Positions 24,844 to 36,799 of a DNA stretch of 64,000 nucleotides are shown here, piece by piece. The notes beneath the pieces are model-generated. The model was not told where the DNA came from, did no database searches, and was given only the letters and a program-made list of their open reading frames with translations. Each line of letters opens with the position of its first letter. Position 1 is the first letter of the stretch. The stretch is from the IMG/VR virus record IMGVR_UViG_3300046516_001816, positions 220,984 through 284,983 of that record, one strand, 5' to 3'. Made by a program: the position numbers and the translations under genes.

Positions 24844-27054
24844 ATGACCGCACTGTTCCAAAACAAGAGCCGCATCGGCTCGCAACCGGCGACTCAGCTG
24901 GACAAGCTGGTGGGCTCGCTGCGTGAAGAAATGAACGGCCACGGTGCCGCATTCGCAGACCGCCACATCTCGAAGGCAGCCCTGTCGCTCGAATCGATCG
25001 ACGCATCGCTTGCCCGCGAACTCGAAGGCTCGCTCTCGCAGCTGAACTCCGCCCTCGAAGGCATCGTCAACGAGCACGGCCTGTCGGGTGACCTGACGGC
25101 GTCGCAACGTGACGCAGCTCTGGCTGCCATGGCCATGACCGGCGACATGGGCTCGTTCCTGCACGGCCAGATCAAGCACGACATGGTCAGCACGGAATCG
25201 ATGAAGTTCATCACCGTCGGTGGCGAAGACCACATGTACGAGCGTGTCAAGCCGGCACTCGAAGCGTACGACGAGAAGGAAAACAAGAACGCGGTGGTGT
25301 ACTCCGTCGCGTACAACTTGCAAGCTGCACGCCAGGACGAATTCGGCGAAGCCTTCTACCCGACCGTCGTCGTGACGCCGGACCAAGTGGGCTACACGGT
25401 TTCGATCCGCCTGATCGAAGTGTACAACGAGCCGAAGCGCGCAATCAGCGGCGCTCCCTCGCAGAACTTCGGCCGCAAGAACATCGTGCAAGCCGTGATC
25501 GATCCGTCGATCCTGCGCAACGACCAAACGAAGATCGTTCCGGTCTATCGCACGGAAAGCGCACCGTACTTCGTGACGAACGCGGCCGTCGAGCCGTACA
25601 ACGTCATGATGACGGACAACACGTCGGTCCTGACCGCACCGCTGGCAGTGGGCCAGAAGTTCTCGCTGCTCGGCCTGTCGCAAACGGAAGCGCTGCTCGA
25701 AACGGGTATCCTCGACGTCACCGACGCCATCGACAGCTCGATCTACCTGTCGGCTGTGTACGTCCAGTTCACGACCGGTGGCGCAACGCCGACCGTGGAA
25801 ACGGTGAAGTTCAACACGCGTCAACTGCCGCTCGCGTCGTTCAACTACGCACAGCAGAACGTCTACCGTCAGATGAACCTCCAGTTCAAGACGGAAACGC
25901 TGCTCATCGGCGCGAACACGGTTCAAGCTGACGGCGCTGCATCGACGATCCTCGCACCGATCGTGTCGGGCGACTACGAAGCGCGTTTCGGCTTCTCGAT
26001 GTTCGGTTCGGTGAACCTCGAACTCGGCGACACCGAAATCAACGCATCGAACGTCGGCGTGAACACGATCAAGAATTCGAGCGATCAGTCGCTGGATCTG
26101 ACGACGGGCACGGGCGCGACGCTGGCTGCGCTGTTCGCAGGCGCGAAGGTCGTGGGTTACGACCTGGAAGCTCATCGTACCAACAGCAACCGTCGTCAAC
26201 GCGGCCAGCTGCTGAACACGAACTTCTACAACCAGATCTACACGGTGCCGCTGCTGGCTCCGATCTCGATTCCGCGTCCGATGGCTGTGGGCGATTCGAA
26301 CGACTCGAGCGATCTGGCTTCGCTGATCACGGCAACGCGTATCCGTACGTCGAACGCCGCAGTCGACGCCATCTTCACGATGCAAGACCTGCTCGCGGAA
26401 ACGACGTCGGCGCTGAACACCGGTGCTGCTCCGAATGCTGCTGCCGACACCCCGGAAATCCTGGGCGTGACGCGCTTCATCATTCAGCCGGCGTACATGA
26501 CGAAGAACCTGGCAATCGACACGCAGACGGACAGCCTCTCGGCTCACCAACGCGCGGCCGACATCCAAGCTTCGCTCATCAACTGCCTGCGCGACATGGC
26601 GTACACGCTGTACGTGCAATCGGGCTACAAGGCAGCTGCGGACGCACTCGCAGGTGGCGTGGGTCCGGTGCCGACGGTCATCATCGGTACGGATCCGTAC
26701 ATCGCGCGTTACCTGATGGTGACGGGCGACCTGCGTACGCTGGGTGGTCAGTTCGACGTGAAGATCGTGTCGACGCTGAACGAACGCATGACGGGCAAGA
26801 TCGTGATGAGCTTCGGCGACTTCTCGAACGAGCGCGCTGGCGTGCCCAACCCGCTGCACTTCGGTAACATGGCATGGAAGCCGGAAGTCACGGTCGTCCT
26901 GCCGATGATCCGCAACGGCGCACAATCGAAGGAACTCACGGTCCAGCCGTCGTTCCTGCACGTCACGAACCTGCCGGTTCTCGGCGTGGTCAACGTCTCC
27001 GGTATCAGCAACATTGCGTACAGCAAGGTGCCGGTCAACTTCCATACCGTTTAA
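24844..27054 (+). CDS. major capsid protein (phiKZ gp120-like)
   Basis: ~736 aa, strong high-expression codon bias, propeptide ending ALE-AYDE, motifs YNLQAARQDEFGEAFYPT, NSNRRQRG, VQPSFLHVTNLP. Confidence 0.9.
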   Translation: MTALFQNKSRIGSQPATQLDKLVGSLREEMNGHGAAFADRHISKAALSLESIDASLARELEGSLSQLNSALEGIVNEHGLSGDLTASQRDAALAAMAMTGDMGSFLHGQIKHDMVSTESMKFITVGGEDHMYERVKPALEAYDEKENKNAVVYSVAYNLQAARQDEFGEAFYPTVVVTPDQVGYTVSIRLIEVYNEPKRAISGAPSQNFGRKNIVQAVIDPSILRNDQTKIVPVYRTESAPYFVTNAAVEPYNVMMTDNTSVLTAPLAVGQKFSLLGLSQTEALLETGILDVTDAIDSSIYLSAVYVQFTTGGATPTVETVKFNTRQLPLASFNYAQQNVYRQMNLQFKTETLLIGANTVQADGAASTILAPIVSGDYEARFGFSMFGSVNLELGDTEINASNVGVNTIKNSSDQSLDLTTGTGATLAALFAGAKVVGYDLEAHRTNSNRRQRGQLLNTNFYNQIYTVPLLAPISIPRPMAVGDSNDSSDLASLITATRIRTSNAAVDAIFTMQDLLAETTSALNTGAAPNAAADTPEILGVTRFIIQPAYMTKNLAIDTQTDSLSAHQRAADIQASLINCLRDMAYTLYVQSGYKAAADALAGGVGPVPTVIIGTDPYIARYLMVTGDLRTLGGQFDVKIVSTLNERMTGKIVMSFGDFSNERAGVPNPLHFGNMAWKPEVTVVLPMIRNGAQSKELTVQPSFLHVTNLPVLGVVNVSGISNIAYSKVPVNFHTV

Positions 27055-27213
27055 CGACGGAGTGGAAAAGTGAAAGGGTGAGTGATTCGCAGTGGCTCGC
27101 TACACGGGAGTCGCTGCCCTTTCACAGTAGAATCAGACGTACGCTGGGGCTTGGCCTCTGTCTGCCCTTCGGGGTGGGCAGAGGCCTCTATGCCGTCAAT
27201 TTATTTTTGGTTA

Positions 27214-27230
27214 TATATTACCTACCTGAG
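27214..27230 (+). promoter_or_regulatory. putative phage early promoter TATATTAC
   Basis: Exact TATATTAC (phiKZ early consensus) upstream of the operon carrying the non-virion RNAP subunit. Confidence 0.6.
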
Positions 27231-28483: not shown

Positions 28484-30127
28484 ATGGATGATGGACTGAT
28501 CTATCGGATCGAAGAGTATATGCCGAAGCTGAATCCGGCGATAGCGAACGGCTTCGCATCTTACCAGATGACCGAACACAACGTCGTCAAGTATATCGAC
28601 AGCGTGTTTCGTTCGGCAGCCAAAGGGTTCCCCGAAGGTTTGACCTACGAAGGCTGCCGGCGCTGTACGCCCCTGGAAGACTTCAACGAGTCGTCCAAGA
28701 AAAAGGGCAATAACAAACGTACCTTCGATGTCGCGGTCTCGTACACGTACATGATGAAATATCTGTTCAAGTACAAGGGCGAAGACATCACGCGCTTTAT
28801 CAATCTGCCGTTTGTCGGCGATGCGGGCTCGATCGTGATGAGCGGCTCGCGCTTCAATATCTCACCCGTGCTCTCCGATCGGGTGATCTCCGTGGGCACC
28901 GAAACCGTCTTCGTGCGTCTGCTGCGCGATGTGCTCACCTTCCAGCGGGTTCCCCAGAACATCAACGTCAATGGCCTGCGTGAACAGGTCAACGTCGCGT
29001 GGGCGATGATTTACCACAAGTCCGCGAAAGACAAGCGCATTCGTCCGACGGTCAAGATGCATTCGACCATGGTGCATTACTTGTTCTGCAAGTACGGTCT
29101 CATGAAAACGTTCGAGATGTTTGCGCGCTGTACGCCGGTGATCGGTGGTCCGGAAATCAACACCAATACCTATCCGGCTGACGAGTGGGTGATCATTGCG
29201 TCGACTCAGATCAAACCGAAGGGCTGCGGCAAGGGCCTGTATGAACCGACCAATCTGCGTGTGGCGGTGCATAAAACGGATTGGTCGCGCATGATGGTGC
29301 GCAATCTGATTGGGGGGCTGTTCTATGTCGCCGATCACTTTCCGGGTCGCGTGCGCGCGGAGTATATCAACAACACGGACCCCAAGTGGATGGATAACAC
29401 CAGCACCTGGATCAGTCTGATGGGCTGGGTGATCTGGGGCGGCAACCAGCACGAAGGCGTGTTGCGCGAACGGGTAGAAGAACACCTGCGATCGCTGGAT
29501 GAATACATCGACAATATTGTCCTGGACAAGTTCCGTCAGATTGGAGTGCAAGCCACCGATCTGTATCAGTTCATGGCAGTTATCATCGAGAACATCACCG
29601 ATATGCTGCACAAAGCGAGTGATAAGGTCAACAGCATGTACGACAAGGAACTGTCGGTGCTGTACTTTGTGCTCAAAGATATCACGAGCGAGATCTTCAA
29701 GCTGTACTTCAAACTGAAGGCGGCGAGCAAGAAGGAGCTCACGAAGAAGGATATCGACGAGCGCATGAACAAGACCATCTCGATGGGGCGCATTTTCAGC
29801 ATCACCAAACAGCACCCAGAAGTCACGACCATCAGTAGTTCGGGTGACAATATGGCGCTGAAGATCACCGGGGTGTTGGTGCCACAGTCGAGTAGTTCCA
29901 AACAGTCGGGTCGCAAGGACCGGGTGGTGATTGATGATCCGTCGCGCTTTCTGCATGTGTCGTATGCAGAGATCGGTGGCTATTCGAATCTGCCCAAGTC
30001 CGACCCGATTGGTCAGTCGCGGATCAGCGGCTGGTGCGAGACCGACCCCGATGGGCTCGTGCTGCGTCGTCCGAAGTTCTACGACATGCTCAATGCGTAT
30101 CAAGACCAGATCCGCAGACGGCGTTAA
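28484..30127 (+). CDS. non-virion RNA polymerase beta subunit, N-terminal part (phiKZ gp123-like)
   Basis: INLPFV..GSRFNISPVLSDRVIS, LHVSYAEIGG, PIGQSRI; position downstream of the capsid gene. Confidence 0.8.
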   Translation: MDDGLIYRIEEYMPKLNPAIANGFASYQMTEHNVVKYIDSVFRSAAKGFPEGLTYEGCRRCTPLEDFNESSKKKGNNKRTFDVAVSYTYMMKYLFKYKGEDITRFINLPFVGDAGSIVMSGSRFNISPVLSDRVISVGTETVFVRLLRDVLTFQRVPQNINVNGLREQVNVAWAMIYHKSAKDKRIRPTVKMHSTMVHYLFCKYGLMKTFEMFARCTPVIGGPEINTNTYPADEWVIIASTQIKPKGCGKGLYEPTNLRVAVHKTDWSRMMVRNLIGGLFYVADHFPGRVRAEYINNTDPKWMDNTSTWISLMGWVIWGGNQHEGVLRERVEEHLRSLDEYIDNIVLDKFRQIGVQATDLYQFMAVIIENITDMLHKASDKVNSMYDKELSVLYFVLKDITSEIFKLYFKLKAASKKELTKKDIDERMNKTISMGRIFSITKQHPEVTTISSSGDNMALKITGVLVPQSSSSKQSGRKDRVVIDDPSRFLHVSYAEIGGYSNLPKSDPIGQSRISGWCETDPDGLVLRRPKFYDMLNAYQDQIRRRR

Positions 30128-30209: not shown

Positions 30210-32264
30210 ATGTACCAGCAACAACTCCCCTTCAGCCCGGATCAACTGCAACAAGGGTTCCTCCAGGGTATTGGGCCGGGCTGTCCCCCGTTCGTTCCGC
30301 AGCTCACGGGTATCCAGCCGTGGTTGCAGAACTACGTACCGGCCATCGCAGGTTATGTCGCCGCGGAGATTCAGAATCAGGCGGAAAAGAATCACTTGCG
30401 TCGGTTCTTCTTCAATATGTTCGGTCGCAACAACTTCGCCAACGAGGACTATATCTCGGTGGTGCAGGCCGCAGCCGACTATCTTCAGTCGCAAGTCGCA
30501 CAGAACCCCAATGTGCGGATTGAGGCGATGATCGATCAGATCGTGCCGCAGACGGTGGAATTGTTCACGTCGCAGATGACGCGTGCCTTTCCGCAGCTGA
30601 ACGCGTATCTCACGCCGAACATGCAGTACAGTGTGTCGCAACAACACGCTGCGTTCGATAACGTGAAGATGCAGATCGAGCGCTTCAAGGGCGGGATGCA
30701 GGCGCCCATGGGAATGCAGCCTCCGATGGGGATGGCGGCGCCCCAGCAAGGCATGATGATGATGCAGCCGACGGGCTATCAGCAGCCGGGCGCGATGATG
30801 CGTGGCGATCCGCGTCTGGGGGGCAATCCGGGCAGTCTCGGGGTGAGCCTCACGGGTCCGGTCACGAGCCTCGCACCGCAAGGTGTGGCGATGGCACCCA
30901 ATCCGCAAGGCAACAGCATGGCGGCCACGAGCCGTTGGGCCATGCCGGATTTGTCGACCCCGCCGGTGCGCACGATCTCGATCGCCCAGCAGGAACAGCA
31001 ACAAGATTCGGGCAATGTGCATATTGCACGCAGCGCGATGCCGGTCCAAAGCACTACCAATCAAACCACGGAGGCCAGCAGTATGAATACCCCGGTACAA
31101 GAACAGGCAGCGCCGCAGGAAGGTCCGATCGAGCCGCTGGCCACGACGTCGCTGAAATGGAAGCGTAGCGCCATTCAGCCGTATTTCCCGGCTTGGGATC
31201 CCCAGCAACAGGATCTGTATTTGCAACGCTTGGCCACCGGCGAGGTGGTGGTCAAGATGAAGGTGAAACAAAAAGGAGCGGAAGTGGAGTACGATCGTCA
31301 CAAAATCCCGAGCGTGTTCGGACCGGCCTTGCCGACGCTCGACCTGAGCAACACGGCGAAGACCCTGGAAATCGTGCAAAAGGGACTCACCGAAATCGAA
31401 CAGGAAAAGAAGGAACGCCTGGAATCGGTGGAACCGTCGTTCAGCACGCGCGTGAATCCGAACTGGTATGTCGATGTGTCGCCCGAGATGGTCTGGTTGA
31501 CGGGTTCGGTGAACTGGCTCGCGTCGATGGAAAACGGCAAGGTGCCCGACATCTATCGTCAGTACGGTCAGGTCGTCGAGATGATCGTCGGCACGGAAAA
31601 CGAAGACAACTACATCGAGTCGTTCCGCGATGCAGGGACCTTCGTGAACCTGCATCGCATGTTGAACGAAACCCAGGGCAAATGCAGCACCCAGCTCTGG
31701 TATCGTCTCAACGATCGGATCACGGAACTGGTGAACCGGGCCCTCGAATTCAACCTCTCGCTCACGGGTCTGACGATCGACTCGTTTGCGAACGACGGCT
31801 TGGATATCATCGAGTATCTGGGCAACCACTACGGTGATACGGTCAAGGGCGCGTTCTTGCACAACCAGGCGTATCTGATTCGCAGCATCTTCGAATCGAT
31901 CTCGCAGGAAAATGCTGACGCGCTCGACGGCAACTTCATCCCGCATCCGGAAGAAGGCGCCGAAGTCGACCCCGAAGCGAAGCCGCCGGTGTTCACGCAT
32001 CTGGTGTCCAACGGCAGCTTCACCTTCCTCAACTGCCTGGCACACGAACTGTCGCTGGAATTCGACAAGGATCACCCGGCGCTCCTGACGGACAGACTCA
32101 CCCCGGTCTTGTATCGTCTGGCCAAGGGCATCATCGAGGACGCCAAGAGCTACACGGGTGCCACCATCGGGCGTCATTTCGTCCAGACGCTCGACGGTCA
32201 CATCCTCGAAGTCGACACCGCGTTCCTGGGTGAAGAAGCGTACCTCGTACGCAAGCTGAAGTAG
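30210..32264 (+). CDS. hypothetical protein with Q/M/P-rich low-complexity region
   Basis: AAACCAAGGA leader; 684 aa; follows the RNAP subunit gene. Confidence 0.8.
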   Translation: MYQQQLPFSPDQLQQGFLQGIGPGCPPFVPQLTGIQPWLQNYVPAIAGYVAAEIQNQAEKNHLRRFFFNMFGRNNFANEDYISVVQAAADYLQSQVAQNPNVRIEAMIDQIVPQTVELFTSQMTRAFPQLNAYLTPNMQYSVSQQHAAFDNVKMQIERFKGGMQAPMGMQPPMGMAAPQQGMMMMQPTGYQQPGAMMRGDPRLGGNPGSLGVSLTGPVTSLAPQGVAMAPNPQGNSMAATSRWAMPDLSTPPVRTISIAQQEQQQDSGNVHIARSAMPVQSTTNQTTEASSMNTPVQEQAAPQEGPIEPLATTSLKWKRSAIQPYFPAWDPQQQDLYLQRLATGEVVVKMKVKQKGAEVEYDRHKIPSVFGPALPTLDLSNTAKTLEIVQKGLTEIEQEKKERLESVEPSFSTRVNPNWYVDVSPEMVWLTGSVNWLASMENGKVPDIYRQYGQVVEMIVGTENEDNYIESFRDAGTFVNLHRMLNETQGKCSTQLWYRLNDRITELVNRALEFNLSLTGLTIDSFANDGLDIIEYLGNHYGDTVKGAFLHNQAYLIRSIFESISQENADALDGNFIPHPEEGAEVDPEAKPPVFTHLVSNGSFTFLNCLAHELSLEFDKDHPALLTDRLTPVLYRLAKGIIEDAKSYTGATIGRHFVQTLDGHILEVDTAFLGEEAYLVRKLK

Positions 32265-32342: not shown

Positions 32343-32765
32343 ATGACGACGCAAAAAGATCCGCTCGAAGTCATCGTGCAAGGTGGTGACGTCGAAGCTA
32401 ACACGCTCGTCTTCGGAGTGGTTCAGCACGCGCTGGATAACGCCGGATTCACGGACGTGTCGGTGCATTCGCCGCAAGGTGATGTGCCGTGCGATGTGGA
32501 AGAAGTCCCGACCCTGCTGGACGTCGTGCGCGCCAACCGACCGCACCTGTTCGATACGCCGATCCGTGTCGAGCAACGCGCGCTGGGTGAAGACGTGCTG
32601 GCAATGTCCACGGACGATCCGGGCGCGATTGGCCTGGCGAAGGTAGTCTACGGCGGTGGGCTGGAAGAAGCGGGTGTTGTGGCCACGGTCGAAGCAGAAG
32701 TACTCCAAGCGATGGAGCGCGATGACTTTGCCGATCCGGTGCAAGACGAAGACGTCGCCTATTAA
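32343..32765 (+). CDS. acidic hypothetical protein
   Basis: CCAAGGA RBS. Confidence 0.75.
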   Translation: MTTQKDPLEVIVQGGDVEANTLVFGVVQHALDNAGFTDVSVHSPQGDVPCDVEEVPTLLDVVRANRPHLFDTPIRVEQRALGEDVLAMSTDDPGAIGLAKVVYGGGLEEAGVVATVEAEVLQAMERDDFADPVQDEDVAY

Positions 32766-32786: not shown

Positions 32787-33125
32787 ATGGCCAAAACTGT
32801 CAAGATTCATCTGGGGCTCAGCGTTGTCTGTACCGTCGCTGACGATGTGGATGAGCAAGGACTCGTCGATGAATTTGTACGACGCACCGAAATCGCGATC
32901 GGTAACGGCATGATTGAAAGTGGGCCGAGCGTGGAGATTGATGAGCATTCACTCTGCGGCACGCTGATTCCGCTGGTGACGGATCCCCTGGAGGACTTTA
33001 TGCATCAGCGTATTGAAGATGGCGAGATGGAGCTCGAAAAAATTCCGGAGCGCCTCGTTCAGTACGGGTTGATGGAGCCGGCTGACTTCCTATCGGAAAT
33101 GACTGAACGCATGCAAGCGCAGTAA
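32787..33125 (+). CDS. acidic hypothetical protein
   Basis: GGGGA RBS; 112 aa. Confidence 0.75.
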   Translation: MAKTVKIHLGLSVVCTVADDVDEQGLVDEFVRRTEIAIGNGMIESGPSVEIDEHSLCGTLIPLVTDPLEDFMHQRIEDGEMELEKIPERLVQYGLMEPADFLSEMTERMQAQ

Positions 33126-33209
33126 GTTTGCCGCGGTCCTTTGATTCGAGGAGGCTTCGGCCTCCTTTTTCTTTTATGCTGGTCGCACAAATTTAAACCA
33201 AGGTTCGTC

Positions 33210-33803
33210 ATGAAAATCGTTCCCTTCTATACGCCTGAAGTCGCCAAGTATTTCTCCGAGTACGGCCCCGTGATGACCGTACCGCGCGGGCTGCAACTCT
33301 ATCAAACCAAGCTGCTACGGCCCGACGTAGCGATCCCGCTGCTGCACCTGGGGGAATCCACGGCGCTGCTGGAAACGTCGATTCTCGACACGACCGATTA
33401 TATCCAGATGGATCCGGCGCCGGCGGTCGACGGGCTGCTCTTCCGTATCATCAAGGAAGGCGAGCCGGACGAACTGTTTTATCAGGAGATCGACGAAACC
33501 GATCACCTCTCGGGACGCTTCCGACCGAATCCGGATGATTATTCGGTGGCCTTGCTGCATACCGACGTCAGCATCGTCCTGCACCGGGTGAACGAAGACA
33601 GCACGCTGGCGATTGCACAAATCAAGGGCACGTTCTTCGCCGATATGGCCACGGTCGAGCTCAAGGGGCGGGTAATCATCAAGGATGAAGACTTCGCCGA
33701 CGGCGTGGAGCTCGTGGGGTATTCTATCGATACGCATCGCTTCAATAGCAAGAGCAAACCTGCCAAGCATCAGATCACACCGACGCGTTACAAGAAGATT
33801 TAA
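33210..33803 (+). CDS. stand-alone paralog of an internal major capsid protein segment
   Basis: Aligns by eye to MCP: KIVPFY/KIVPVY, LLHLGESTALLETSILDTTD/LLGLSQTEALLETGILDVTD, VGYSIDTHRFNS/VGYDLEAHRTNS. Confidence 0.75.
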   Translation: MKIVPFYTPEVAKYFSEYGPVMTVPRGLQLYQTKLLRPDVAIPLLHLGESTALLETSILDTTDYIQMDPAPAVDGLLFRIIKEGEPDELFYQEIDETDHLSGRFRPNPDDYSVALLHTDVSIVLHRVNEDSTLAIAQIKGTFFADMATVELKGRVIIKDEDFADGVELVGYSIDTHRFNSKSKPAKHQITPTRYKKI

Positions 33804-33880
33804 GCTGACGGCATAGAGCCCGGCCCCCACATGGGGAGCCGGGCCTTTATGCCGCCTTCTTTTTTTGGCTTCAAACGAGC

Positions 33881-36799
33881 TTAGGACTTGGGTTGCTGAT
33901 CCTTGTCCTGGTTCTCGTCCTCTTCCCCTTCCTTCGGCTGCGCGTTAGCGTCGGCGCCAGGTGCTGCATTCTGGTCGGCGTTATCGCTCGGTGCCGCTTC
34001 GCCCGGGGCTGCGGGCATCGTATCACCCTGACCGTTGCCCGTATCGAGCTCGGGTGCGTCAAACCCGGTCTGATCTCCAAACCCACCACCGCTGTTCTCA
34101 TCGGTGCCCGACGTGTCCGTGGAACCGAAGTCCGTGCTACCCCCTGCGGCTGTGGTGGTGAGCTTGCCCTCGGTGTCCTTGAGCTCCTCGTTGGATTTGT
34201 TGGTGATCGAGACCAGATCCTTGAAGAACTCACCAAACGTCTTCTGCAACGTTTCGATGTGTTCCGATTGGATCTTGAAGACGTCCACCGCCGGCTTGCC
34301 GTCTTCGGTTTTCGTCGTGAGCTGCGAGAGTTCCGTCATCATGCCGTTCTCGCTCATCCATTGACGCAAGAAGTAGGCTTTCGCCACTTCCTTGAGCACC
34401 GTGATCTTCTCGGCGACATTGCCACCCGTATCCGGCGTGAAGAACTTCTCCGACAGCCAGGCATCGAGCGCCATGTCCAGGGCTTCACTGTAACTCTTGA
34501 ATGCGGCGAACTGGTTTTCCAGTGTCGTCGAATTTGGACGCGGCAGGGTCACTGTCACGTTCATCAAGAATTCATTGAGGACCTGGTTGACGATGTACTC
34601 CTGATCATCCTCGCTCAGGTTGCCGGTGCCGTCCGAGTTATCGCTGCGCTTTTCGTCGATGATCGGCACACCCGTGTTGTTGCCGTAGTTGCGCGGATCA
34701 CTTGACTTCCTTTTCGCGTTCTTCTTCTCGTCCTTCGTGATGGTGAGTTTCTTGAAGTTCTCACGGAGAATCTCTTTCAAGTCCTCCACGAGCTCTTCCG
34801 AATTCATCGCGTGCTGACGCATATGCGTGGCCAGCTGCGGATGGAACTCGTCCTGAATCTGCATCACGCGCTTGGAGAGCAGGATGTTGTTGGTCACCAC
34901 CGAGGTCGCCAACTCCGGCTGGTAGGCCGCGTCAATCGTTTCCGGCGGCACACCCGTCTTCATGATCGCCCGCTTGCGCAGGTTATCTTCAAGCTCGGTG
35001 TCGGGCTTGGTGTACTGGCTGTTCTTCTCGCCGAAGTCAATCGACACGTCCGGCATGCCCGGGTGCCCTTCGTACGTGAATTCAAAGCCTGCGCGCGTAA
35101 TGAAGTCCACCACTTCAGCCGGCGAATTCACCCCCAGCGGCAAGAAGTTCTGACGGCTGCGGATGATTTCATGCATCGCCGTCTCAAGCGTCTTCTCCGG
35201 ATTGGCGTCATCCTCGTCGAACTTGAGTTTGACTTCCGTGCGACCGATCGAGTTCTTGATGCCGGCCATCACGTTGGCAAACAGCAGCATCGAGCGCAGA
35301 CTGTTCAGGATCTTCAGCTCGTCGAGCAACGACTCCCCGATGCCATCCTTATTGAAGCGGAAGGCAAAGTACGTCATGAACTCCGCCGGGATAAAGAGCA
35401 ACTGCGTATGCTGACGGGCCAAGGCCCGTGCAAACATAATGCGGTAGATCTCTTCACGCTTGCCGATCGCCACGCTGTTGCCATACGGTCCGTTGCGCAG
35501 ACGGGCGAGCAAGTCCTGCTCCACCATGTCCCCGTAGACTCGCGACGAGTAATCGAGGTGGTCCCGGTTATGGACATCAAAGCCTTCCATCTGGCTTTTG
35601 ACCTTGGTGAGCATCGCACTGGGGAAGCTCCCCGACGTCGACATCCGTTGCTGCATCTGCTGGTAGTGGTCGGTGATCTGTTGACGCACCACCGGATGGC
35701 CGTCCTGATCGAGCAGCACAAAGAAGCCGATCTGGTTTTGCGGCGTGCCCGGCACGTGCACCGGAATGATGGCTTCCGAAGGGATATGCATCACCATCGG
35801 GTTGCCCACCATGCGACGATCCAGCTGCTCGTGGGTTTTGACAGTCGCCACCGGCTGGTAATTAAACCGGCGGTTGCGATACAGCAAGCCCGTGAGTTCC
35901 CGATCGTTCATCTTCTGCATCGGGCTATTGTTACCCACCCCCAGCGATTCCAACGCGGACGAGCCCCAGGCCTTGAGCGTCTTATGCTCGCGCAGCTTCT
36001 GGTTGATCAGTGGCACCTTGAGCGCGGTCGGATTGTCCGTGACGGTCAAGAACACGTCTTCCTTATTGAGCGGCTTCGAAAAGCTGCTCTCAAAACGCAC
36101 CAGCCCGATCTCCTGCTCGATGGCGATATTTTCGTCATTGAACTGCTCGATCGCCAAACCCGGACCGCGGGCTTCTTCGGTGGGCTTCTTCTTTTGCACC
36201 GGACCCAGCAAACCCACCGGACGGATCGTGCCATCGGGGTTGATATGCTCAGCGAGGTTTTCCATGGCCATGCGCACTTGGCCGTTGATCACTTCGTCGA
36301 CCGAGTTTTCCGGGATCACCGCAATGCCGTAGGAGCCCGTGCGGAACAGCGTGTCGCGCAGGATCTTGGGAATGAGCGGTTTAATCTTATGGACTTGTTC
36401 GAAATGCTGCCGGTAACGGTCGATCATGGCGCCGGCGACGTCGGGGGCCATGAGGCCTTCAGGCGCTGTGTAGGTCAGCTCCAGCGTCATCATGTCCTTG
36501 GGCGAACCCACGGATGACACCAGAATCTGCTGCGACAACTCCATGTCGGGCAAGAGCTGCATGACCGTTTCAGCGTCATTGACGTTTTGCGCGGTCTGTT
36601 CAGCAGCGTTTCGGAAACTGTACAAGTTAGGCTGCACCGGTTCACGGTTGCCCTTATCGTTGTACTGGTTGGGGTGCTGCGACGGAATCAGCTTAGCCAA
36701 AGTGGCGGCTGTACCCGGGTCCTGTCGCACCAATTGCATGACAGGAAATCTTTTACCGCTACCCGCCAATTCAATGGCTTTGTCGTATCCGTTAGACAT
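33881..36799 (-). CDS. portal protein (phiKZ gp129-like)
   Basis: 972 aa; LLPDMEL..QILVSS..SPKDM, IPSEAIIPVHVPG, GIGESLL; acidic C-tail; conserved gene order. Confidence 0.75.
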   Translation of the reverse strand: MSNGYDKAIELAGSGKRFPVMQLVRQDPGTAATLAKLIPSQHPNQYNDKGNREPVQPNLYSFRNAAEQTAQNVNDAETVMQLLPDMELSQQILVSSVGSPKDMMTLELTYTAPEGLMAPDVAGAMIDRYRQHFEQVHKIKPLIPKILRDTLFRTGSYGIAVIPENSVDEVINGQVRMAMENLAEHINPDGTIRPVGLLGPVQKKKPTEEARGPGLAIEQFNDENIAIEQEIGLVRFESSFSKPLNKEDVFLTVTDNPTALKVPLINQKLREHKTLKAWGSSALESLGVGNNSPMQKMNDRELTGLLYRNRRFNYQPVATVKTHEQLDRRMVGNPMVMHIPSEAIIPVHVPGTPQNQIGFFVLLDQDGHPVVRQQITDHYQQMQQRMSTSGSFPSAMLTKVKSQMEGFDVHNRDHLDYSSRVYGDMVEQDLLARLRNGPYGNSVAIGKREEIYRIMFARALARQHTQLLFIPAEFMTYFAFRFNKDGIGESLLDELKILNSLRSMLLFANVMAGIKNSIGRTEVKLKFDEDDANPEKTLETAMHEIIRSRQNFLPLGVNSPAEVVDFITRAGFEFTYEGHPGMPDVSIDFGEKNSQYTKPDTELEDNLRKRAIMKTGVPPETIDAAYQPELATSVVTNNILLSKRVMQIQDEFHPQLATHMRQHAMNSEELVEDLKEILRENFKKLTITKDEKKNAKRKSSDPRNYGNNTGVPIIDEKRSDNSDGTGNLSEDDQEYIVNQVLNEFLMNVTVTLPRPNSTTLENQFAAFKSYSEALDMALDAWLSEKFFTPDTGGNVAEKITVLKEVAKAYFLRQWMSENGMMTELSQLTTKTEDGKPAVDVFKIQSEHIETLQKTFGEFFKDLVSITNKSNEELKDTEGKLTTTAAGGSTDFGSTDTSGTDENSGGGFGDQTGFDAPELDTGNGQGDTMPAAPGEAAPSDNADQNAAPGADANAQPKEGEEDENQDKDQQPKS

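What the first reader, a model, noticed from the sequence alone, without database searches (positions are those of the whole stretch)
33210..33803. Free-standing copy of an internal domain of the major capsid protein
Seen: the 197-aa protein aligns collinearly with the MCP segment encoded at ~25531-26190. MKIVPFYTPEVAKYF vs TKIVPVYRTESAPYF; PLLHLGESTALLETSILDTTD vs SLLGLSQTEALLETGILDVTD; IKGTFFADMATVEL vs MFGSVNLELGDTEI; VELVGYSIDTHRFNS vs AKVVGYDLEAHRTNS. The similarity spans nearly the whole small protein. It lacks the propeptide and the rest of the capsid fold, and lies at the end of the gene run carrying the RNAP subunit rather than beside the capsid gene. Inference: an excised capsid insertion domain acting as a decoy for capsid-sensing host defences, an assembly/docking modulator, or a decoration protein.
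Basis: partly seen in the sequence, partly recalled or inferred. Interest (0 to 1): 0.75.

Follow-up and report, generated by a model that had tools for sequence, protein, structure and literature searches.

The report
Stand-alone copy of capsid insertion domain
A phiKZ-like giant phage carries a small, separately transcribed, fast-evolving gene that is a genuine stand-alone copy of the surface "insertion" domain of its own major capsid protein; the gene belongs to a widespread family that no paper I found describes and whose function is unknown.

Summary
ORF 33210-33803 (+), 197 aa, is homologous over its whole length to the I (insertion) domain of the window's phiKZ-type major capsid protein (MCP, 24844-27054). 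BLASTP gives E 5e-7, the Smith-Waterman z-score is 9.5 against shuffles, and the family profile matches the MCP at E 2.8e-29. The AlphaFold model superposes on phiKZ gp120 residues 251-467 (Z 17.2); the published I domain is 248-472. The copy lacks two MCP-specific loops of about 20 aa each.

It is not a recent excision. Fourteen free-standing 173-201 aa proteins form one strongly supported clade. In the window's sub-lineage the gene always sits last in the MCP / nvRNAP / JADA-like run, convergent with the portal gene.

It evolves about twice as fast as its neighbours: 30% identity where the MCP keeps 82%. It is missing from some close relatives. Further stand-alone I-domain genes exist in this genome and in 201phi2-1, RP12, FLC9 and RTH11, but not in phiKZ, PhiPA3 or Goslar.

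The gene is an insulated unit: terminator, TATG (the late-promoter motif in phiKZ), ORF, bidirectional terminator.

Function is untested. I favour an accessory protein that makes I-domain-type contacts with the MCP or capsid. A counter-defence or competition mimic is a serious rival. Two distant paralogues are absent from virion proteomes.

The parts
33210..33803 (+). Gene for the 197-aa free-standing MCP I-domain paralogue (stop codon included)
   Evidence: ORF and start. Homology to the MCP I domain. Fold match to phiKZ gp120 251-467, Z 17.2. Fourteen-member family.
33148..33167 (+). Intrinsic-terminator hairpin (8 bp stem, UUCG loop) followed by a T-run. It closes the upstream run of nvRNAP, JADA-like, 140-aa and 112-aa genes.
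   Evidence: Terminator scan. Fold -14.3 kcal/mol, z -2.7, 0 of 200 shuffles as stable.
33175..33178 (+). TATG motif 32 nt upstream of the ATG; candidate late-type (nvRNAP) promoter and start site. Inferred, not shown.
   Evidence: Sequence. The same hairpin-TATG-UTR layout lies 30-38 nt before tail-fibre and transglycosylase genes of this genome. TATG with G as +1 is the phiKZ late-promoter motif (PMC4666361).
33194..33203 (+). 5'-UTR box TAAACCAAGG containing the ribosome-binding site
   Evidence: The same box lies before many start codons of this genome.
33809..33854 (.). Long palindromic hairpin between the convergent I-domain and portal genes; bidirectional terminator carrying the TATGCC motif on both strands
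   Evidence: Fold -39.3 kcal/mol (+) and -41.9 kcal/mol (-), z about -6.7, 0 of 200 shuffles as stable. Sequence.
24844..27054 (+). Major capsid protein gene (phiKZ gp120 type), the parent fold
   Evidence: Pfam PhiKZ_MCP E 2.8e-185. PHROG 3231. PDB MCPs of Goslar-like phages, phiKZ and phiKp24.
25519..26229 (+). Part of the MCP gene encoding its I domain (aa 226-462), the segment the small protein copies
   Evidence: hhalign MCP 224-458. Mapping to phiKZ I domain 248-472.
33881..36799 (-). Portal protein gene, convergent neighbour (context)
   Evidence: phmmer hits to PHIKZ129 (9xpe) at E 6.6e-120 and to 'Portal Protein gp36'. The same neighbour is present in L002, L003, L004/L005 and L006.
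28484..30127 (+). Non-virion RNA polymerase subunit gene (PHIKZ123 homologue) (context)
   Evidence: PDB 7ogp_E PHIKZ123 E 2.7e-78. PHROG 2943.
30210..32264 (+). JADA-like gene (phiKZ_124 position), immediately downstream of the nvRNAP subunit (context)
   Evidence: PDB 9rp3 Gp316/JADA E 1.1e-7 over the N-terminal domain. Conserved position described in PMC12931631.

Best explanation
Shown. The gene encodes a soluble, acidic 197-aa protein that is a stand-alone paralogue of the MCP I (insertion) domain. In phiKZ and Goslar capsids that domain sits on the outer surface, packs on the P domain and I-domain linkers of the neighbouring subunit, and pairs with another I domain across two-fold axes.

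The family arose by an old duplication. In this lineage it is inherited vertically at a fixed site next to the portal gene. It evolves about twice as fast as its neighbours and is dispensable in some relatives.

Inferred. It is transcribed as its own monocistronic unit from a TATG late-type promoter just after a terminator, that is, together with the morphogenesis genes.

Inferred, my preferred mechanism. It acts in trans through I-domain-type contacts with unassembled MCP or with the capsid lattice. It would be an accessory modulator of assembly, or a loosely bound or low-copy capsid-surface protein, for example filling I-domain pairing sites left unpaired around the portal vertex. It would not be a core shell component.
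For: Identity:
- Sequence homology to the MCP I domain.
- Fold match.
- I-domain limits and contacts from PMC11297242 and the Goslar preprint.

Family and history:
- 13 free-standing relatives in an exhaustive phmmer search of 1.8 billion representatives; no MCP among the hits.
- One clade at 100/100 support.
- A single origin of all 20 stand-alone copies examined is not rejected (p-AU 0.20).
- The gene's phylogeny follows that of its neighbours.

Fixed site: DnaB(-), gp93-like, MCP, 391 aa, nvRNAP, about 680 aa, about 135 aa, I-domain gene, portal(-). This order holds in the window, L003, L004/L005 and L006, and partially in L002.

Conserved motifs shared with MCP I domains (KIxPVYRxE..YF, SLL..SQTxALLETG..D.TD.ID, NYR, VNLELGD, VVGYDL.A.R.N.NR) show that the domain core is maintained.

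Transcription unit:
- Terminator, TATG, UTR box and bidirectional terminator.
- Same layout before tail-fibre and transglycosylase genes.
- TATG is the phiKZ late promoter.
Against: - No direct evidence of binding. The MCP plus small-protein co-fold scored 0.00, which the tool says is no answer either way.
- 201phi2-1 gp106 carries no mass-spectrometry note in its GenBank record, while the MCP gp200 is marked as a virion protein and gp98 is marked as identified by mass spectrometry.
- RP31 ORF211, the orthologue of RP12 ORF214, is absent from the 32-protein virion table.
- Neither the icosahedral phiKZ capsid structure nor the reconstructions reported for Goslar contain such a protein, and both genomes lack the gene.
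- In other lineages the gene lies among small non-structural genes: beside ribonucleotide reductase in RTH11, and between chimallin and an nvRNAP subunit in 201phi2-1.
- The hairpin-TATGCCGT element also occurs where no gene follows, so the TATG may belong to the terminator rather than to a promoter.
- The copy lacks two loops. In phiKZ numbering the second deletion (427-446) begins three residues after Asp424, one of the four I-I pairing residues; Lys415 and Asp424 themselves fall in aligned columns.
Confidence: 0.4

Rival explanations
1. Counter-defence or competition mimic. The free I domain copies the most exposed part of the MCP. It would bind host sensors that recognise capsid protein without activating them, or it would poison capsid assembly of a co-infecting related phage. 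Either way it would be locked in an arms race.
For: - It is the fastest-evolving gene of a conserved block: 30% identity against 47-82% for neighbours, and 52% against 78-95% in a closer pair. The MCP's own I domain stays at 80%.
- Branch lengths are about ten times those of the MCP I domains.
- Presence is patchy: it is absent from the fetched region around the MCP and portal genes in the P0026 and P0028 phages, and absent from that site in RP12.
- Two to three I-domain copies per genome in this phage, FLC9 and pEt-SU.
- Other family members lie in arrays of small accessory genes.
- Distant paralogues are not seen in virions.
- Capsid proteins are known triggers of several defence systems (my own knowledge: CapRel, Lit, Pycsar and CBASS escape mutants).
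Against: - No defence system or partner has been identified.
- A faithful copy of a trigger epitope would be expected to activate a direct sensor rather than block it.
- I know of no precedent for a capsid-domain decoy.
- The fast rate could equally reflect relaxed constraint or an exposed surface position on the capsid.
- The gene is kept at one site next to the portal gene and carries a late-type upstream layout.
Confidence: 0.28
2. Re-used scaffold. The beta-rich I-domain fold was duplicated and now binds something unrelated to capsids, such as a host factor, the nuclear shell or a transcription component. Only the fold core is retained.
For: - Only core motifs are conserved between the stand-alone copies and the MCPs, and the two surface loops are deleted.
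- In 201phi2-1 the homologue gp106 lies between chimallin gp105 and nvRNAP beta' gp107. Here the gene follows the nvRNAP and JADA-like run.
- Residues forming phiKZ I-I salt bridges are not conserved.
Against: - Those salt-bridge residues are not conserved among MCPs either, so that comparison is uninformative.
- The NYR loop, which contacts I-domain dimers in phiKZ, is kept.
- A terminator separates the gene from the early run.
- No alternative partner is suggested by any search.
Confidence: 0.2
3. Decaying or neutral duplicate with no function.
For: High divergence and loss in some relatives.
Against: - The reading frame is intact in all 14 family members.
- The fold is confidently predicted (pLDDT 84).
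- Motifs are conserved, and the gene has its own terminators, ribosome-binding site and fixed position across phages whose neighbouring genes differ by 50%.
Confidence: 0.05

Closest known systems
I (insertion) domain of phiKZ gp120 and of the Goslar and phiKp24 major capsid proteins
   Same: Homologous sequence and the same fold over the whole domain: Z 17.2 on gp120 251-467 and 16.6 on phiKp24 92-311. The core motifs are shared.
   Different: It is not embedded in an HK97-fold protein. It has no I-domain linkers, N-arm, P or A domains and no propeptide. It lacks two loops of about 20 aa each, and it evolves about ten times faster.
Uncharacterised stand-alone I-domain proteins of cultured jumbo phages: 201phi2-1 gp106, RP12 ORF214 / RP31 ORF211, FLC9 gp87 and gp132, RTH11 WJJ55076, Phabio and pEt-SU proteins; PHROG 36436
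   Same: Same fold (BFVD hits at probability 1.0, TM 0.56-0.72) and profile matches. All are annotated as hypothetical.
   Different: Most lie at other genomic sites. FLC9 gp87 is the exception and lies between the JADA-like gene and the portal gene. Some carry extra C-terminal parts (FLC9 gp87 381 aa, Phabio 315 aa). The window protein itself does not hit PHROG 36436. Only gp106 groups with the window's family, on a long branch.
Capsid decoration or cement proteins acting in trans versus insertion domains acting in cis (lambda gpD, phage L Dec, T4 Soc; P22 coat I domain). From my own knowledge.
   Same: An auxiliary capsid-stabilising module can be supplied either as a domain of the MCP or as a separate protein. 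A separate I-domain copy would fit this alternation.
   Different: Those decoration proteins are not paralogues of their own MCP's insertion domain. Here the phage already has the domain in cis, and no virion association has been shown.
Full-length MCP paralogues (T4 gp24 vertex protein; Ccm of capsid-forming PICIs). From my own knowledge.
   Same: A duplicated capsid-protein sequence used as an extra morphogenetic factor.
   Different: Those keep the complete HK97 fold and enter the shell lattice. This protein keeps only the insertion domain and cannot form a shell subunit.

Membership tests
phiKZ-type MCP I-domain homologues | Significant sequence similarity to the I-domain segment of phiKZ-type MCPs | tested here: met
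   BLASTP E 5e-7 and 6e-4. Shuffle z 9.5. hhalign E 2.8e-29 on MCP 224-458. Profile hits to four solved MCPs.
phiKZ-type MCP I-domain homologues | Predicted fold superposes on a solved I domain | tested here: met
   VIA-align Z 17.2, rmsd 2.8 A, model 1-182 on 8y6v_A 251-467. Foldseek probability 1.0. I domain is 248-472 in PMC11297242.
Pfam PF25620 PhiKZ_MCP (full major capsid protein) | Score above the gathering cut-off (27 bits) and presence of the HK97 core (N-arm, P and A domains) | tested here: not met
   15.7 bits, E 0.0043, covering only profile positions 146-274 of 635. The protein ends just after the I domain. It is not a capsid shell protein.
PHROG 36436 (unknown function, MCP-I-domain-like) | HMM match | tested here: not met
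   No hit even at E 10. Relatives P0005, P0006 and P0010 hit weakly (3e-6 to 5e-3), and the MCP hits at 2.5e-7.
Capsid decoration / minor capsid protein | Physical presence in purified virions | not testable with these tools
   No proteome exists for this phage. Distant paralogues were not reported in virions of 201phi2-1 (GenBank notes) or RP31.
Capsid decoration / minor capsid protein | Binding to the MCP lattice | tested here: inconclusive
   Complex prediction of MCP 141-736 plus the small protein scored 0.00. The verdict was 'no answer'.
Capsid decoration / minor capsid protein | Late expression with the morphogenesis genes | tested here: inconclusive
   A TATG lies 32 nt upstream, with the same layout as tail-fibre genes. 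The motif is also part of pure terminators. No RNA runs were listed.
Anti-defence decoy / mimic | Accessory, rapidly diversifying gene | tested here: met
   30% identity against 82% for the MCP between the same two phages. Absent from the P0026 and P0028 phages at this site.
Anti-defence decoy / mimic | Inhibition of a defined defence system or binding to a sensor | not testable with these tools
   Needs plating and co-expression assays.

The most novel reading that the evidence does not exclude
Stand-alone I-domain proteins are a family-wide class of capsid-surface mimics in nucleus-forming jumbo phages. They would act in conflicts rather than in the virion. They might blunt host sensors that recognise the exposed part of the capsid protein, or interfere with capsid assembly of competing jumbo phages. 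Either would explain their speed of evolution, copy-number variation and absence from virion proteomes.
Probability: 0.22. Interest if true: 0.85.

Novelty: new variant of a known kind. Interest (0 to 1): 0.55.

Why it matters
Insertion domains and decoration proteins are the two known ways tailed phages reinforce HK97-type shells. A phage that carries the domain both inside its capsid protein and as a separate, rapidly diversifying gene is a third arrangement, and I found no paper describing it.

The family is present in experimentally tractable phages: 201phi2-1 gp106, RP12/RP31, FLC9 and RTH11. Its role in assembly, in capsid-surface variation or in evasion of capsid-sensing immunity can therefore be tested directly.

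The work also gives dozens of 'hypothetical proteins' of jumbo phages a concrete structural annotation.

Tried and rejected
- tblastn and megablast of the gene against 50,697 phage records found nothing. The word-indexed protein search found only the protein itself. The exhaustive search was needed.
- The search for related loci with the family alignment failed because no stretch was conserved enough.
- P0009, a 797-aa tandem-repeat protein in the phmmer list, is a spurious short-motif hit.
- Complex prediction gave no answer.
- No sequencing runs were listed for the locus, so expression could not be examined and read laying was not used.
- The ESM Atlas search was uninformative: its own model has pLDDT 0.29 and all TM scores are at or below 0.40.
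- I tried to use the phiKZ I-I salt-bridge residues (R296, D366, K415, D424) to judge whether the pairing interface is kept. These positions vary among MCPs themselves, so the test says nothing.
- Recent duplication from the phage's own MCP was rejected. The copy sits in a separate clade and is no closer to its own MCP than to others.
- Cassette replacement as the cause of the low identity was rejected, because the gene tree follows the neighbours' relationships.
- Reading the hairpin-TATGCCGT element purely as a promoter was rejected, because it also stands at convergent gene ends.
- The 201phi2-1 virion paper (PMC2577825) is not held. I used the notes in the GenBank record instead.

Full report
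**What the window is.** The window is the last 64 kb of a 284,983-bp virus record. Its 736-aa protein at 24844-27054 is a phiKZ-type major capsid protein (MCP). Pfam PhiKZ_MCP scores E 2.8e-185 and PHROG 3231 also matches. The solved MCP sequences of phiKZ, phiKp24 and two other entries, one of which corresponds to Goslar by residue numbering, match at E 1e-64 to 3e-90. The nearest cultured relatives are Burkholderia phage FLC9 (53% identity) and Ralstonia phages RP12 and RP31 (43%). Metagenomic relatives reach 94%.

The gene order around the finding is:
- DnaB-like helicase (-)
- gp93-like 187-207 aa protein
- MCP
- 391-aa protein
- non-virion RNA polymerase subunit (PHIKZ123 homologue, E 2.7e-78)
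- 684-aa JADA-like protein
- 140-aa and 112-aa proteins
- the 197-aa ORF
- the portal gene on the other strand, convergent (PHIKZ129 homologue, E 6.6e-120)

**Checking the observation.** The ORF 33210-33803 is open. It has an AAGG ribosome-binding site 6 nt before the ATG, and its homologues begin with the same residues. BLASTP against the MCP gives two collinear matches: residues 2-65 against 230-296 (41% identity, E 5e-7) and 165-197 against 433-465 (E 6e-4). The Smith-Waterman score of 83 is 9.5 standard deviations above 1000 shuffles, and none reaches it.

An exhaustive phmmer search of 1.84 billion representatives returned 13 other free-standing proteins of 173-201 aa, and one spurious repeat protein. 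Their alignment (A1), compared with the MCP by hhalign, covers the small protein end to end against MCP 224-458. The probability is 99.8% and E is 2.8e-29.

The AlphaFold2 model built on that alignment is confident (pLDDT 84, pTM 0.78). In the PDB its only Foldseek matches at E <= 0.001 are the phiKp24 and phiKZ MCPs. A second alignment places model residues 1-182 on gp120 residues 251-467, with Z 17.2 and rmsd 2.8 A. The phiKZ capsid paper defines the I domain as residues 248-472. It describes the domain as an extension of the HK97 E-loop that sits on the A/P junction and I-domain linker of the neighbouring subunit and pairs with another I domain across two-fold axes (PMC11297242). The Goslar preprint describes the same packing.

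Compared with MCPs, the stand-alone copies lack two segments. These are equivalent to phiKZ 377-394 and 427-446.

**History of the gene.** In a maximum-likelihood tree of I domains from 24 MCPs and 16 free-standing copies, the 14 proteins of the window's family form one clade (100/100) on a long stem. Their terminal branches are roughly ten times longer than those of the MCP I domains. With five more sequences added, a single origin of all 20 stand-alone copies is not rejected (p-AU 0.20). 201phi2-1 gp106 joins the window's family, although on a long branch. The copy is therefore old, not a recent excision from this phage's MCP.

Within the window's sub-lineage the gene is syntenic. In L003, L004/L005 and L006 it is the last gene after the JADA-like and ~135-aa genes, convergent with the portal gene; L004/L005 and L006 also hold the MCP and nvRNAP genes of the run. 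The short contig L002 shows the same portal neighbour at 80% identity. The gene tree follows the relationships of the neighbouring genes: (window, L002), then L003, then (L004, L006). This points to vertical descent rather than cassette swapping.

The rate, however, is exceptional. Identities for the two pairs compared:

| Gene | Window vs L004 | L004 vs L006 |
|---|---|---|
| MCP | 82% | 94% |
| MCP I domain alone | 80% | not computed |
| Portal | 74% | not computed |
| nvRNAP subunit | 66% | 95% |
| JADA-like | 49% | 78% |
| 140-aa protein | 50% | 79% |
| Free-standing I domain | 30% | 52% |

The gene is also dispensable. A profile scan of the fetched region around the MCP gene found no stand-alone copy in two close relatives, the phages carrying P0026 and P0028; the P0026 region includes the portal gene. 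RP12 lacks it at this position.

**How widespread stand-alone I domains are.** This genome holds a second, more diverged copy of 180 aa at G000:214775-215317. It lies outside the window, beside three tRNA genes and an HNH gene. Whole-record profile searches gave the following:
- No extra copy: phiKZ, PhiPA3, Goslar, RSF1, LucasX.
- One extra copy: 201phi2-1 (gp106), RP12 (ORF214), RTH11 (WJJ55076).
- Two extra copies: FLC9 (gp87 and gp132).

A structural search of viral models adds proteins of Phabio, pEt-SU (two copies) and others. All are 'uncharacterized'. Their contexts differ:
- gp106 lies between the chimallin gene gp105 and the nvRNAP beta' gene gp107.
- RTH11's copy follows the ribonucleotide reductase genes.
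- RP12 ORF214 lies among nucleotide-metabolism genes.
- Metagenomic members P0006, P0007 and P0010 sit in runs of small genes.

PHROG 36436, of unknown function, is a related profile. My full-text searches found no paper describing these proteins.

**Transcription anatomy.** An 8-bp GC-rich hairpin with a T-run lies at 33148-33167 (-14.3 kcal/mol, no shuffle as stable). It separates the gene from the upstream run. Immediately after it lies TATG (33175-33178), 32 nt before the ATG. A TAAACCAAGG box follows and is found before many start codons of this genome. Downstream, a 46-nt palindrome (-39 and -42 kcal/mol on the two strands) stands between the gene and the portal gene.

Genome-wide, about 66 hairpins are followed by TATGC(C/T)(G/C); the commonest form is TATGCCGT. 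Roughly half are followed by a start codon in the same direction, most of them 21-41 or 58-68 nt downstream. The 30-38-nt class includes two tail-fibre genes and a transglycosylase gene; the longer-spacing class includes a third tail-fibre gene, DNA polymerase and thymidylate kinase. The rest stand at gene ends with no gene following.

In phiKZ, TATG with G as +1 is the late promoter recognised by the non-virion RNA polymerase (PMC4666361). I therefore infer, and have not shown, that the gene is a monocistronic late-type unit. The motif could instead belong to the terminator. No RNA or DNA runs were listed for the locus.

**What it most likely does.** Nothing tested here shows function. The domain's only documented role is protein-protein contact on the capsid surface. 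The gene is kept next to the portal gene and has the upstream layout of late genes. The domain core, including the NYR loop that touches I-domain dimers in phiKZ, is conserved. This favours a trans-acting partner of the MCP or the capsid: an accessory assembly modulator or a loosely bound or low-copy surface protein. One attractive site is the ring of hexons around the portal, whose I domains lose the penton partners they pair with at ordinary vertices. That idea follows from the geometry described and is inference only. I give this family of mechanisms 0.4.

Several points count against a stable virion role:
- 201phi2-1 gp106 has no mass-spectrometry note in a GenBank record that carries such notes for the MCP gp200 (virion protein) and for gp98.
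- RP31 ORF211 is not among the 32 virion proteins found by gel-band LC-MS/MS.
- Both of these are distant paralogues, and both methods miss low-copy proteins.

The fast evolution, patchy presence, multiple copies and accessory-gene neighbourhoods fit a conflict protein at least as well. That could be a mimic of the exposed capsid surface acting on host sensors or on a rival phage's assembly (0.28). A simple decoy has a logical weakness: a faithful copy of a trigger should itself trigger a direct sensor. A re-used scaffold with an unrelated partner (0.2) and a neutral relic (0.05) complete the list. The co-fold of MCP 141-736 with the small protein scored 0.00, which the tool states is not evidence either way.

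**Verdict.** This is a stand-alone MCP I-domain gene. It is a member of an old, fast-evolving, widely scattered and so far uncharacterised family in phiKZ-like phages, with its own terminator-bounded transcription unit. Its three functional options remain open, and none can be chosen on present evidence.

Noticed in passing
L021:1456-1998 (= G000:C1:214775-215317, about 5.7 kb upstream of the window start): A second, more diverged free-standing I-domain paralogue (180 aa) in the same genome. It lies next to tRNA-Tyr, tRNA-Asn and tRNA-Thr genes and an HNH endonuclease gene.
   Followed up: partly
window 30210-32264 (+): The 684-aa protein directly downstream of the nvRNAP subunit matches the N-terminal domain of PDB 9rp3 Gp316/JADA (E 1.1e-7). 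JADA is the early, essential Chimalliviridae protein reported to activate Avs5 defence, and it is said always to follow an nvRNAP subunit gene (PMC12931631).
   Followed up: partly
whole genome; in the window e.g. 17279, 27190, 33174, 33847, 43278, 59324: About 66 copies of a composite element: a GC-rich hairpin followed by (T)TTATGCCGT(C). It stands both at convergent gene ends and 21-41 or 58-68 nt before start codons. This suggests coupled terminator and late-promoter sites.
   Followed up: partly
window about 27190-27215 (+), between the MCP and the 391-aa gene: After the MCP terminator there is an AT-rich TTATATATTAC stretch resembling phiKZ-type early promoters, just ahead of the 391-aa and nvRNAP genes. 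This would split the + strand run into late (MCP) and early (nvRNAP, JADA-like) units.
   Followed up: no
window 32343-32765 (+): The 140-aa protein upstream of the finding has four paralogues in the equivalent region of FLC9 (gp83, gp84, gp85, gp88). It is 50-81% conserved in L002-L006. Its function is unknown.
   Followed up: no
window 32787-33125 (+): The 112-aa ORF between the 140-aa gene and the I-domain gene has no counterpart in L004 or L006 and no family hit. It looks like a lineage-specific insertion.
   Followed up: no
L026:4965-5531 (201phi2-1 gp106): In the model phage 201phi2-1 the stand-alone I-domain gene lies between the chimallin gene (gp105) and the nvRNAP beta' gene (gp107). 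It carries no virion mass-spectrometry note. This is a convenient experimental handle for the family.
   Followed up: partly
L024:19132-22214: In the contig carrying MCP P0028, the expected position of the portal gene holds DeoR, PdxA-like and other bacterial-type genes. This may be an assembly chimera or a rearranged genome.
   Followed up: no
L023:7307-9387: The DnaB-like helicase of the phage contig found in a Paraburkholderia assembly is split into 143-aa and 441-aa ORFs. The assembly label also hints at the host range of this phage group.
   Followed up: no
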